A DNA stretch of 64,000 nucleotides from Macrostomum lignano (lineage: Eukaryota): contig NIVC01001551.1 of assembly GCA_002269645.1 (NCBI GenBank), positions 205,279 to 269,278 of the forward strand, in the 5' to 3' direction. This document shows, one piece after another, positions 30,901-33,535 of the stretch. Every line of letters begins with the position of its first letter. Within the stretch, counting starts at the first letter, position 1. The notes under the pieces are model-generated. The model ran no database searches. It was not told the DNA's origin and worked only from the letters and a program-made list of their open reading frames with translations. The position numbers and the translations under genes were made by a program.

Positions 30901-33535
30901 ATCTATCTATCTATCAATCTATCTATCTATCTATCTATCTATCTATCTATCTATCTATCTATCTATCTATCTATCTATCTATCTATCTATGTATCTATCT
31001 ATCTATGTATCTATCTATCTATCTATGTATCTATCTATGTATCTATCTATCTATCTATCTATCTATGTATCTATCTGTCTATCTATCTAGCTATGTATCT
31101 ATCTATCTATCTATCTATCTATCTATGTATCTATCTATGTATCTATCTATCTATCTATGTATCTATGTATCTACTATCTATCTATCTATGTATCTATGTA
31201 TCTATCTATCTATCTATGTATCTATCTATCTATCTATCTATCTATCGATGTATCTATCTATCTATCTATGTATCTATGTATCTACTATCTATCTATCTAT
31301 GTATCTATCTATCTATGTATCTATCTATGTATCTATCTATCTATCTATGAATCTATCTATGTATCTATCTATCTATCTATCTATCTATCTATCTATGTAT
31401 CTATCTATCTATCTATCTATCTATCTATCTATCTATCTATCTATCTATCTATCTATCTATCTATGTATGTATCTATCTATGTATGTATCTATCTATGTAT
31501 CTATCTATCTATCTATGTATGTATCTATCTATCTATGTATGTATCTATCTATCTATCTATCTATCTATCTATCTATCTATCTATGTATCTATCTATGTAT
31601 GTATGTATCTATTGCGTCTATTGCGTACTATGTATCTATACCAACTGCGTCTCGCGTGGCCTGTCTGGCTACCCAATTAATTACTGTATATGAATTCAAT
31701 AGTTACATCTAATTATTTACACTTATTTATGCAAAGTTCTCAGTGCTCTGTATTAATTTAATATTTGTTTTTTTCTACGGGCGTAATTAACTTATTTGTT
31801 GAACTTTTCAAGATGCTTAGTCATACACTTCTACGCTTTAAATCTGGTTTTCTATAGCACCTAACATATTTATTTTTGTGCAAGGCTTTAGCTGCAAGAC
31901 TTTAACCAATCAGCGTGCTTCAACTCACGTTTTTAACTAATTATACGTACACATCTTTACTTAACACTGCTCAGTGCACCCCCAAAAGTCGCATATATAT
32001 ATTGAAATTATGTTAAAATAACTTCACAGCCAATATATTTGTTTTTAAACCCGAATAAATAAACCCTGACGAAGGCCCAGTCCAGGCCGAAATATCGGTT
32101 TATGAATATTCGACAACTAACGTTCTTCAATATTTCCGTGTGTGTGGTTTGCAGTTTGAAGCTGCCTTTTGCATATCTATCTATCTATCTATCTATCTAT
32201 CTATCTATCTATCTATCTATGTATCTATGTATCTATCTATCTATCTATGTATCTATCTATCTATCTATGTATGTATCTATCTATGTATGTATCTATCTAT
32301 TTATCTATCTTTCTATCTATCTATCTATCTATCTATCAATGTATGTATGTATCTATCTATCTATCTATCTATCTATCTATCTATCTATCTATCTATCAAT
32401 CTATCTATCTATCATCTTTGTATCTATCTATCTATCTATCCATCTATCTATCTATCTATCTATCTATCTATCCATCTATCTATCTATCTATCTATCTATC
32501 TATCTATCTATCTATCTATCTATCTATCTATCTATCTATCTATCTATCTATCTATCTATCTATCTATCTATCTATCTATCTATCTATCTATCTATCTATC
32601 TATCTATCTATCTATCTATCTATCTATCTATCTATCTATCTATCTATCTATCTATCTATCTATCTATCTATCTATCTATCTATCTATCTATCTATCTATC
32701 TATCTATCTATCTATCTATCTATCTATCTATCTATCTATCTATCTATCTATCTATCTATCTATATATCTATCTATCTATCTAACTATATTATTATTGTAT
32801 TTTTCTTAATGGTTTTTAGCATTCCGAGATACTCGATAATAAATAATGTTTGATGCAATGCATTCTGCTAACATCTGTTCTCTTAGACTAAAAGACGGTA
32901 CTTTCGCTTTTACCCATTTCCTGCGAAATTTAAACAAAAAGTAATTAGAAAAAAAACCCTACGGTTTAGTTGCGAGTCAAACACATACAAAAAACCAGCG
33001 AGAAAATGAGCCTTTAAATCATTTTTTCCATGAAACGCGCGTTTAACTTCCCGTTGCAAATTTCTAGCGCTCCTTGGTTACTCATAGAAACAGAAACTAA
33101 CCCGGAAGTCAAAGTGCCACTTTCAGAGCCTCTGTTGACAGCCGCTTTCTTGGCGGCGACGTCTTCCCCGTTTTCAAGCCCGACGACATCGTCGTCGTAG
33201 TCATCTTCCTCCGAGTCGTCGGCCGCGCCGCCTGGCCGGCAGGTGATCAGCAGAGTCTGGACGCGGTACTCCTCGGCGAGGCCAAGCCGCGGCGTCTTCA
33301 CGATGGCGATGTCGGCCACCCGGCGGAGGCTGACGGCCAGCCGCATTGTCGAGCACTTGACGTCGGAGAAGTAGATGGACTCGCCGACTAGCAGGAAGTA
33401 GGCCTCCTCGGGCGAAGATTTTCCGCCGCTGGCCTCGTCGGTGAGAACTCGCTCGAAACAGCGGAGCTTGTCGCTCTTGCCAGGCAGGCTGCGCTTCAGG
33501 TGCTCTTTGAGCACGATATTGTCCAGACTGGTCAT
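24945..33535 (-). CDS. C12orf56-like / DUF4551 protein, multi-exon. Exons approximately 33535-~33090, ~30600-29979, 29238-28962, 28292-28081, [27720-27706?], ~26525-26378, ~25430-24945
   Basis: Peptides recognised as C12orf56-like: [19 protein letters not shown]...[20 protein letters not shown]...[41 protein letters not shown] junctions with matching phase checked for several introns. Phase between the 28081 and 26525 exons is unresolved. Confidence 0.8.
25622..25835. repeat. (GACA)n microsatellite (intronic)
   Basis: Directly visible. Confidence 0.97.
26545..27090. repeat. (GGCA)n microsatellite with periodic GCAC interruptions (intronic)
   Basis: Directly visible. Confidence 0.97.
28333..28815. 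repeat. 18-bp G-rich minisatellite (gagtggggtgggtgtagg), intronic
   Basis: Tandem array between the acceptor at 28293 and the donor at 28961. Confidence 0.93.
29272..29945. repeat. 21-bp minisatellite (gtacagtaagcacccgtgtga), intronic
   Basis: Tandem array filling intron 29239-29978. Confidence 0.93.
30645..31610. repeat. (TCTA)n/(TGTA) microsatellite, left array
   Basis: Directly visible. Confidence 0.97.
31611..32172 (+). mobile_element. Candidate Penelope-like (PLE) pLTR remnant or non-autonomous ribozyme-bearing element inserted in a (TCTA)n array
   Basis: About 560-bp unique AT-rich block flanked on both sides by the same microsatellite. Contains CCAAT (31906-31910), a TATA-like run (31994-32001) and a minimal hammerhead. 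No RT or GIY-YIG coding sequence seen. Confidence 0.5.
32052..32112 (+). ncRNA. Minimal type-I hammerhead ribozyme
   Basis: Stem I ATAAACC (32059-65) / GGTTTAT (32097-103), extended by CGAATA/TATTCG across an internal loop. Core CTGACGA (32066-72) plus one extra A. Stem II GGCC-cagtcca-GGCC. GAAA at 32089-92. Palindromic ATAT in place of stem III. Predicted cleavage after C32096 (AUC). Confidence 0.8.
32173..32780. repeat. (TCTA)n microsatellite, right array
   Basis: Directly visible. Confidence 0.97.

What the first reader, a model, noticed from the sequence alone, without database searches (positions are those of the whole stretch)
32052..32112. Minimal type-I hammerhead ribozyme hidden in an intron
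All core elements can be read directly. Stem I: ATAAACC/GGTTTAT plus a distal CGAATA/TATTCG helix beyond an internal loop. Core CUGACGA(A), 4-bp stem II with a 7-nt loop, GAAA, and an AUC cleavage triplet. Stem III is reduced to the palindrome AUAU. Established knowledge: minimal hammerheads with a palindromic 4-nt stem III (usually ACGU) are characteristic of Penelope-like retroelements and cleave efficiently as dimers. The AUAU/AUC variant is less typical. It lies antisense to the DUF4551 pre-mRNA.
Basis: partly seen in the sequence, partly recalled or inferred. Interest (0 to 1): 0.7.

Follow-up and report, generated by a model that had tools for sequence, protein, structure and literature searches.

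The report
Solo retroelement-type minimal hammerhead motif
The sequence really does contain a complete minimal hammerhead ribozyme motif of the kind carried by Penelope-like retrotransposons, but it is a lone retroelement fragment sitting backwards in an intron, so it is a real and fairly ordinary feature.

Summary
The parts are a 7-bp helix I plus a 6-bp distal stem, CUGACGA plus one extra A, a 4-bp GGCC helix II with a 7-nt loop, GAAA, the palindrome AUAU, and C17. Cleavage is predicted between 32096 and 32097.

Chance is very unlikely. My descriptor found this site alone in the window and nothing in 40 Mb of random sequence. A covariance model built from unrelated minimal hammerheads scores it 43.6 bits (E 1.4e-10).

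It shows three hallmarks published for Penelope-like-element (PLE) minimal hammerheads: an unpaired base after A9, a G10.1-C11.1 pair, and a palindromic 15.1-16.1 tetranucleotide.

It lies in a roughly 533-nt unique island that interrupts a 2.1-kb (ATCT)n array. The island ends about 77 nt 3' of the cut site, similar to the published Poseidon geometry. The site is in an intron of a DUF4551 gene, antisense.

No second copy and no PLE reading frame were found in the window. I could not retrieve relatives from the source genome. AUAU is a rare and weak helix III, so cleavage at this locus is doubtful.

Verdict: a new member of a known kind, of low to moderate interest.

The parts
31641..32173 (+). 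Roughly 533-nt unique island that interrupts the (ATCT)n array. Inferred to be a terminal (pLTR-like) fragment of a PLE-family retroelement in + orientation. The 3' junction is sharp at about 32173/32175. The 5' junction is fuzzy, about 31606-31640.
   Evidence: array 30646-32787 with the island inside. (no other copy in the window). (no other Rfam family or tRNA). (the island as a whole is not unusually structured, z = +0.41, but the hammerhead fold is retained).
32052..32057 (+). Distal (closing) stem of helix I, 5' strand, CGAAUA. A32058 is unpaired (internal loop 1).
32059..32065 (+). Helix I, 5' strand, AUAAACC (positions 2.7-2.1).
32066..32072 (+). Catalytic core C3 U4 G5 A6 C7 G8 A9 (CUGACGA).
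32073..32073 (+). Extra unpaired A between A9 and G10.1, a hallmark of PLE minimal hammerheads.
   Evidence: PMC4209133.
32074..32088 (+). Helix II hairpin: GGCC / GGCC (G10.1-C11.1 closing pair) with the 7-nt loop CAGUCCA.
32089..32091 (+). Core G12 A13 A14.
32092..32095 (+). A15.1 U15.2 A16.2 U16.1: the palindrome AUAU. It is the only remnant of helix III and can pair only with a second copy.
   Evidence: (AUAU duplex +0.2 against ACGU -3.1 kcal/mol)..
32096..32097 (+). C17 and G1.1. The predicted scissile bond lies between 32096 (2',3'-cyclic phosphate) and 32097 (5'-OH).
   Evidence: with hammerhead numbering from established knowledge.
32097..32103 (+). Helix I, 3' strand, GGUUUAU. GAA 32104-32106 is unpaired (internal loop 1).
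32107..32112 (+). Distal stem, 3' strand, UAUUCG.
30646..32787 (.). The (ATCT)n microsatellite, 75% A+T, in which the island sits. It has the same unit and strand on both sides. Inferred insertion target.
24948..33583 (-). Host DUF4551 gene. The open frames carrying Pfam matches are 33017-33583 (profile 7-77), 29978-30655 (173-291), 28038-30059 (317-405; 33.6 bits against a cut-off of 27) and 24948-25463 (538-608). The hammerhead lies between the first two, so it is intronic and antisense.
   Evidence: Exon 1 is conserved in a related species (L121).

Best explanation
The motif is a genuine minimal type-I hammerhead. It belongs to a solo terminal fragment of a Penelope-like-element-family retroelement. 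That fragment is either a heavily 5'-truncated PLE copy or a monomer of one of its non-autonomous derivatives.

The fragment inserted in + orientation into an AT-rich (ATCT)n array inside an intron of a minus-strand DUF4551 gene.

In the parent element the ribozyme lies at the pLTR/ORF boundary. By inference from the literature, it cuts multimeric element transcripts only when two copies pair through their palindromic 15.1-16.1 tetranucleotide and swap helix I strands (the 'double hammerhead'). The element's own protein probably helps.

At this locus the RNA would need antisense transcription and has no partner copy within 32 kb on either side. Its AUAU helix III is about 3 kcal/mol weaker than the usual ACGU. 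It is therefore most likely a catalytically silent relic. It cannot cut the DUF4551 pre-mRNA, because that transcript carries the complement of the ribozyme.

Shown here: the motif, its statistical significance, its context and its orientation. Inferred: PLE origin, the dimer mechanism, and inactivity at this locus.
For: Motif and fold:
- Searches confirm the sequence and structure.
- One search shows the fold is retained in the whole island.

Uniqueness and significance:
- this is the only descriptor hit in the window.
- 0 hits in 40 Mb of random sequence.
- 3 hits per 30 Mb without the helix I and palindrome requirements.
- covariance model R1, built from 16 unrelated minimal hammerheads, scores the site 43.6 bits (E 1.4e-10). 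The next hit scores 15.5 bits.

PLE hallmarks not needed for a bare core match:
- An extra nucleotide after A9, G10.1-C11.1 and a palindromic 15.2/16.2 are all present (against PMC4209133).

Context:
- The island interrupts a single (ATCT)n array with a sharp 3' junction and a ragged 5' junction.
- The island ends about 76-78 nt 3' of the cut site, or about +100 from the start of stem II.
- In Poseidon PAc, reverse transcription starts at +111-118 from stem II, which is also where the ORF starts. Genomic copies end there, and targets are AT-rich.
- Solo copies are the rule for this class (PMC4209133). About 43% of related Xenopus elements are intronic.

Weak helix III:
- AUAU duplex +0.2 against ACGU -3.1 kcal/mol.
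- Adding helix III to the swapped dimer costs +3.6 kcal/mol for AUAU and +0.3 for ACGU.

Host gene strand.
Against: - No reverse transcriptase or GIY-YIG reading frame was found in the ORFs I tested. No second copy is present in the window.
- No relatives of the island were retrieved from any collection. The two hits are repeat-driven and spurious. Family membership by copy number and covariation is therefore untested.
- Helix II (4 bp) and helix I (7 + 6 bp) look more like canonical metazoan type-I hammerheads than the long-helix-II, short-helix-I PLE families described for Schistosoma.
- No ATG lies at stem II as it does in PAc. The nearest in-frame ATG is at 32102.
- Rfam hammerhead models do not detect the site. 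They also miss eight control loci with minimal hammerheads, so this is uninformative.
- R1's core and GGCC stems come from a pattern modelled on the candidate. Only helix I is an independent test.
Confidence: 0.72

Rival explanations
1. The island is specifically a dispersed monomer of a non-LTR retrozyme. These are small non-autonomous elements derived from PLE pLTRs. They normally occur in tandem and are expressed as circular RNA. On this reading it is not a truncated copy of an autonomous PLE.
For: The island length of about 533 nt is within the reported range. Consensus lengths run from 51 to 972 bp, with a mean of 650 bp in ray-finned fishes. Monomers are dispersed and often intronic. Helix I of 7 bp with an internal loop and helix II of 4 bp resemble canonical retrozyme hammerheads.
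Against: Retrozyme hammerheads keep a 1-2-bp helix III with a tetraloop; here there is none. The extra base after A9 is the PLE minimal trait. The island RNA is not unusually structured (z = +0.41). No tandem arrangement is present.
Confidence: 0.2
2. The motif is a chance match to the hammerhead consensus in AT-rich intronic DNA.
For: The bare core pattern CUGANGA...GAAA...UH is common by chance (3.8 expected per window). There is only one copy and no conservation data.
Against: The full descriptor gave 0 hits in 40 Mb of random sequence. My extrapolated rate is about 3e-6 per window and about 0.05 per Gb genome. A perfect 6-bp distal stem and three unforced PLE hallmarks add to this.
Confidence: 0.03
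3. The motif is a host-co-opted ribozyme that processes an antisense transcript or regulates the DUF4551 locus, analogous to the conserved intronic hammerheads of amniotes.
For: It is intronic and has an intact core and stems.
Against: It is antisense to the gene. It lacks helix III, so it cannot act alone. It has no partner copy nearby. It is embedded in a microsatellite, like a transposon insertion. The only related-species contig I could obtain does not reach this region, and its non-coding flanks are already unalignable.
Confidence: 0.04

Closest known systems
Minimal hammerheads of Penelope-like elements (Cervera & de la Pena 2014, PMC4209133; Lunse, Weinberg & Breaker, RNA Biol, cited in PMC6765202 but not readable here)
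   Same: Type-I topology. Full core. No loop 3. A palindromic 15.1-16.1 tetranucleotide. An unpaired base between A9 and G10.1. A G10.1-C11.1 pair. It occurs as a solo copy, as most copies of this class do.
   Different: The tetranucleotide is AUAU rather than the commonest ACGU (5 against 39 of 120). Helix II is only 4 bp, and helix I is long (7 bp plus a 6-bp distal stem). The Schistosoma PLE families have a 7-8-bp helix II and a 4-5-bp helix I. No flanking PLE reading frame is seen.
Poseidon PAc hammerhead of Anolis carolinensis (Frangieh et al. 2024, PMC11167929)
   Same: The hammerhead lies close to the 3' end of genomic copies. Here the copy ends about +100 from the start of stem II; in PAc reverse transcription starts at +111-118. 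The insertion target is AT-rich. A minimal hammerhead would be expected to need help to cleave.
   Different: In PAc the ORF starts at stem II. Here there is no ATG at that position (the nearest in-frame ATG is at 32102), and no ORF follows. Protein-assisted cleavage was shown for PAc and is untested here.
Canonical type-I hammerheads of metazoan non-LTR retrozymes and newt satellite 2 (Cervera & de la Pena 2020, PMC7229834)
   Same: Helix I of about 6-7 bp followed by an internal loop. A 4-bp helix II with a 6-7-nt loop. A very weak palindromic helix III, with dimer-dependent cleavage.
   Different: Those hammerheads retain a 1-2-bp helix III with a tetraloop. They sit in tandem arrays and make circular RNAs. 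This one has no loop 3 and is a single copy.
Conserved intronic hammerheads of amniotes (Rfam HH9/HH10)
   Same: Intronic location.
   Different: Those are in the sense orientation, have a full helix III, are active as monomers, are deeply conserved, and are detected by Rfam. This one is antisense and minimal, and Rfam does not detect it.

Membership tests
Hammerhead ribozyme (catalytic motif) | Conserved core C3 U4 G5 A6 N7 G8 A9 ... G12 A13 A14, with A15.1, U16.1 and a non-G at position 17. | tested here: met
   CUGACGA 32066-32072, GAA 32089-32091, A 32092, U 32095 and C 32096. There is one inserted A after A9.
Hammerhead ribozyme (catalytic motif) | Helices I and II flank the core. | tested here: met
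   Helix I is 7 bp plus a 6-bp distal stem. Helix II is 4 bp. Both are in the MFE and centroid folds.
Hammerhead ribozyme (catalytic motif) | Helix III closes the three-way junction within one molecule. | tested here: not met
   Only the 4-nt palindrome AUAU lies between A14 and C17. A helix III can form only between two copies. The predicted duplex energy is +0.2 kcal/mol.
Hammerhead ribozyme (catalytic motif) | Site-specific self-cleavage that depends on the core nucleotides. | not testable with these tools
   Needs in vitro transcription and cleavage assays.
Rfam hammerhead families (Hammerhead_1, _3, _II, HH9, HH10) | Score at or above the family's gathering threshold. | tested here: not met
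   No hit at the gathering threshold, and none at E<=10 in a 251-nt slice. As a control, eight loci with minimal hammerheads from metagenomes were also missed at E<=1. The models do not cover this class.
PLE-type minimal hammerhead (Cervera & de la Pena 2014) | An unpaired nucleotide between A9 and G10.1. | tested here: met
   A at 32073; criterion.
PLE-type minimal hammerhead (Cervera & de la Pena 2014) | A G10.1-C11.1 closing pair. | tested here: met
   G 32074 pairs with C 32088.
PLE-type minimal hammerhead (Cervera & de la Pena 2014) | No loop 3, and palindromic 15.2/16.2. | tested here: met
   AUAU 32092-32095. It is a rare variant: 5 of 120.
PLE-type minimal hammerhead (Cervera & de la Pena 2014) | Long helix II (6-8 bp) and short helix I (4-5 bp). 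This is typical of the described families and is not part of the descriptor. | tested here: not met
   Helix II is 4 bp. Helix I is 7 + 6 bp.
PLE-type minimal hammerhead (Cervera & de la Pena 2014) | Lies in a pLTR next to an RT/GIY-YIG reading frame, or is a truncated copy of such an element. | tested here: inconclusive
   No RT or endonuclease domain was found in the ORFs tested. The insertion-like island in a microsatellite and the PAc-like 3'-end distance fit a truncated copy. No relative was available for comparison.
PLE-type minimal hammerhead (Cervera & de la Pena 2014) | Member of a multi-copy genomic family with compensatory changes in the stems. | not testable with these tools
   The source genome is not available. 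Searches of the window, viral contigs, metagenome contigs and the protein collections found no relative.

The most novel reading that the evidence does not exclude
The AUAU-type minimal hammerhead marks a lineage-specific PLE or retrozyme family that may still be active and that targets (ATCT)n microsatellites. Its ribozyme would have canonical-size helices I and II but no helix III, making it an intermediate between PLE minimal hammerheads and retrozyme hammerheads. It would cleave only with element-encoded protein. Alternatively, this copy has been co-opted to process an antisense transcript of the DUF4551 locus.
Probability: 0.07. Interest if true: 0.45.

Novelty: new member of a known kind. 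Interest (0 to 1): 0.25.

Why it matters
The finding shows that a tool-free read of raw sequence can correctly pick out a minimal hammerhead that every Rfam hammerhead model misses.

The biology itself is expected. Thousands of such motifs are scattered through fish, amphibian, reptile and invertebrate genomes as debris of Penelope-like elements.

Modest value lies in three points:
- The hybrid architecture, with canonical-size helices I and II but no helix III, fits the proposed kinship between PLE pLTRs and animal retrozymes.
- The AUAU palindrome is a natural weak-helix-III variant for testing the dimer and protein-assisted cleavage models.
- The insertion into an (ATCT)n array adds a data point on PLE target preference.

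Tried and rejected
- **Rfam.** No hammerhead hit at the gathering threshold or at relaxed thresholds. The negative control shows the models miss the whole class, so this was discarded as evidence.
- **Copies in the window.** A 35-mer search with 3 mismatches and BLAST of the island found none.
- **Viral contigs.** 0 hits.
- **Relatives through translated ORFs.** The + frame across the hammerhead (the first query was too short) and the 58-aa minus ORF gave no candidates.
- **Exhaustive HMMER search with the minus ORF.** It returned two proteins. Both are internally repetitive. Their scores are sums of many weak matches of about 7 bits to an 'RYFG..W.F'-type peptide. Back-translation does not give a CUGANGA core. 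I rejected both as spurious.
- **Metagenome pattern scan.** It returned at least 120 minimal hammerheads, mostly on contigs that look like host DNA; one, L050, carries a zf-AD zinc-finger gene. None resembles the island outside the core.
- **L052 ORF.** The ORF downstream of the hammerhead in L052 has no Pfam domain.
- **Literature.** A string search for the sequence gave only an irrelevant hit. The SRA run of the related-species contig is not mentioned in any paper, so the organism remains unidentified.
- **Papers and supplements not held.** The supplement of PMC4209133 is not available. The Lunse et al. paper is not available.
- **Folds.** The 3' 80 nt and the whole island are not significantly structured.
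- **CpG decay.** It is uninformative because the window as a whole has CpG o/e 0.7.
- **Open frame from ATG 32102.** It is too short (24 codons) to support or reject a PLE ORF start.
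Full report
**1. The observation**

The + strand at 32052-32112 reads CGAAUA-A-AUAAACC-CUGACGA-A-GGCC-CAGUCCA-GGCC-GAA-AUAU-C-GGUUUAU-GAA-UAUUCG. In standard hammerhead numbering:
- Helix I is 32059-32065 / 32097-32103 (7 Watson-Crick pairs).
- A 6-bp distal stem, 32052-32057 / 32107-32112, lies beyond a 1 x 3-nt internal loop.
- C3-A9 is 32066-32072.
- An extra A sits at 32073.
- Helix II is GGCC/GGCC with G10.1-C11.1 and a 7-nt loop (32074-32088).
- G12-A14 is 32089-32091.
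- A15.1-U16.1 is AUAU (32092-32095).
- C17 is 32096.

ViennaRNA gives exactly this fold minus helix III as both MFE and centroid (-17.1 kcal/mol, z = -3.0). The same sub-structure survives when the whole 533-nt island is folded.

**2. Is it more than chance?**

The bare core pattern is not significant: 1 hit against 3.8 expected. The full architecture is.
- I wrote a descriptor requiring helix I >=4 bp, helix II >=4 bp, 0-1 extra nt, complementary 15.2/16.2, and U then a non-G.
- It finds only this site on both strands of the window.
- It finds nothing in 40 Mb of first-order Markov sequence with the window's composition.
- A sanity run without the helix I and palindrome requirements gave 3 hits per 30 Mb. 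This agrees with a hand calculation.
- From that I infer about 3e-11 per position for a 7-bp helix I. That is roughly 3e-6 per window and 0.05 per Gb genome, before counting the perfect distal stem.

As a partly independent check I built a covariance model (R1) from 16 distinct minimal hammerheads found in metagenome contigs. With filters off it scores the site 43.6 bits (E 1.4e-10). The next hit scores 15.5 bits and lacks helix II. One caveat applies. Those training sequences were fetched with a pattern modelled on the candidate's core and GGCC stems, so only helix I is an independent test.

**3. Rfam**

No hammerhead family matches at the gathering threshold or at E<=10 in a 251-nt slice. 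This is not evidence against the motif. Eight control loci carrying minimal hammerheads were equally invisible at E<=1. They include ones with 6-7-bp helix I and a tandem array.

**4. What kind of hammerhead**

Cervera & de la Pena 2014 (PMC4209133) defined minimal hammerheads of Penelope-like elements (PLEs). They list features that emerged without being in their descriptor:
- a conserved G10.1-C11.1 pair;
- palindromic 15.2-16.2.

All three are present here.

The helix sizes fit less well. Helix II is 4 bp with a 7-nt loop, and helix I is 7 bp followed by an internal loop and a closing stem. These are the sizes the same paper gives for 'canonical' metazoan type-I hammerheads. The Schistosoma PLE families instead have a 7-8-bp helix II and a 4-5-bp helix I. 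The motif is therefore a hybrid: canonical-size helices I and II with a PLE-style absent helix III and the extra base.

I scanned metagenome contigs with CTGANGANGGCC-N5-9-GGCCGAAANNTC. The scan hit its 120-locus limit.
- Many of the contigs look like host DNA; one, L050, carries a zf-AD zinc-finger gene.
- They include inverted pairs (L028, L036) and a tandem array (L042).
- Among 120 distinct motifs the 15.1-16.1 tetranucleotide is ACGT 39, ACAT 36, AGCT 15, ATGT 8 and ATAT 5.

**5. Context**

The motif sits in a unique island of about 533 nt (31641-32173). The island interrupts one 2.1-kb (ATCT)n array (30646-32787), which has the same unit and strand on both sides.
- The 3' junction is sharp (...GCCTTTTGCAT|ATCTATCT).
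- The 5' junction is ragged, with repeated TGCGTCT motifs.
- That is what a 5'-truncated, target-primed retro-insertion in + orientation would leave.

Frangieh et al. 2024 (PMC11167929) characterised the Poseidon element PAc.
- Its ORF starts at stem II of the hammerhead, and the cut site is at +26.
- Reverse transcription initiates internally at +111-118, and genomic copies end there.
- The endonuclease prefers AT-rich DNA.

Here the island ends about +100 from the start of stem II, or 76-78 nt past the cut site. The target is 75% A+T. This is one comparison, not a statistic, but it fits.

Other findings on the island:
- No RT or GIY-YIG domain was found in the ORFs tested.
- The island has no other Rfam family or tRNA.
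- The window has no second copy.
- Solo copies are the norm for this class.
- Li et al. 2026 (bioRxiv 10.64898/2026.07.22.740005) report that dispersed monomers of PLE-derived retrozymes are common, and that about 43% of copies in Xenopus are intronic.

**6. Host gene**

Four colinear minus-strand open frames match Pfam DUF4551:

| Frame | Profile positions | E-value | Note |
|---|---|---|---|
| 33017-33583 | 7-77 | 0.26 | |
| 29978-30655 | 173-291 | 0.15 | |
| 28038-30059 | 317-405 | 2.8e-8 | 33.6 bits against a cut-off of 27 |
| 24948-25463 | 538-608 | 8e-6 | |

Exon 1 is about 90% identical at the nucleotide level to a contig from a related species. The flanks of that contig do not align. 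The hammerhead lies between the first two coding blocks, on the opposite strand. 'In an intron, antisense to the DUF4551 pre-mRNA' is therefore supported. The pre-mRNA carries only the complement of the ribozyme, so it cannot be cut by it.

**7. How it most likely works**

The following is inferred from the literature. In the parent element, two copies pair through the palindromic tetranucleotide and swap helix I strands, forming a double hammerhead with two active sites.
- Published activity is low even for dimers.
- For PAc it required the element's protein, and it was dispensable for insertion in vitro.

The following was computed here.
- An AUAU duplex is worth +0.2 kcal/mol against -3.1 for ACGU.
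- Adding helix III to the strand-swapped dimer costs +3.6 kcal/mol for AUAU against +0.3 for ACGU under nearest-neighbour rules. These rules ignore tertiary contacts.

There is no partner within 32 kb, and the ribozyme strand would need antisense transcription. I therefore expect this copy to be silent.

**8. Searches for relatives that failed**

- Viral contigs: none.
- Translated-ORF searches of the 5.8-billion-protein collection: no candidates.
- The exhaustive HMMER search returned two internally repetitive proteins. Their scores are sums of weak repeats, and back-translation does not give a hammerhead core. I consider them spurious.
- None of the metagenome loci resembles the island outside the core.
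It needs the source genome.

**9. Verdict**

This is a real, statistically secure minimal type-I hammerhead motif of the PLE kind. Most likely it is an inert solo retroelement fragment. It is a new member of a known and very abundant class. Its minor points of interest are the AUAU helix III, the hybrid helix sizes and the microsatellite target. No step needed to be referred.

Noticed in passing
window 374-2221, 8380-9888, 24948-33583, 37341-42694, 57622-60896 (all minus strand): There are five minus-strand genes or gene fragments: a Methyltransf_22/21 ORF of 616 aa, a RhoGAP exon, DUF4551, a Frizzled gene in at least three exons (Fz domain plus 7TM), and a pyridine nucleotide-disulphide oxidoreductase (Pyr_redox_2 / Rubredoxin_C).
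   Followed up: partly
window 28334-28861 and 29273-29944: An 18-nt and a 21-nt minisatellite (about 29 and 32 copies) lie inside a 674-aa minus-strand open frame. That frame also carries the DUF4551 match to profile positions 317-405. I did not determine whether the repeats are coding or intronic.
   Followed up: no
window 26374-27135: A long GCCT/GCCTGCCT-type microsatellite keeps several reading frames open ('ACLPACLP', 'GRQAGRQA'). The window as a whole is very rich in micro- and minisatellites, and its CpG o/e is about 0.7.
   Followed up: no
L042 2688-3148 (minus strand); L028; L036: Some metagenome contigs that look like host DNA carry four minimal hammerheads in a tight tandem array at about 50-150-nt spacing (L042). 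Others carry inverted pairs (L028, L036). These arrangements match those described for PLEs and retrozymes.
   Followed up: partly
Metagenome loci, e.g. L044, L085, L025: In 21 of 120 motifs, helix I starts 2 nt after '...TC' (GAAACATC-TA-helix I). This implies a different register of the cleavage site, or a 1-bp helix III with a CAUC loop. It was not resolved.
   Followed up: no
L063 655-815 and L081 453-575: Weak Rfam matches to plant and insect miRNA precursor models overlap minimal hammerheads. They probably reflect long hairpins formed by inverted element copies.
   Followed up: no
L121 about 300-365 (Logan SRR24204725): Upstream of the related species' DUF4551 exon 1 there is a stretch that looked to me like the reverse complement of a tRNA 3' half, as a tRNA-derived SINE might leave. 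ARAGORN found no tRNA.
   Followed up: partly
window 31606-31650: At the 5' junction of the island, the motif TGCGTCT/TGCGTACT recurs three times, interleaved with microsatellite units. It may be a microhomology or template-switch scar.
   Followed up: no
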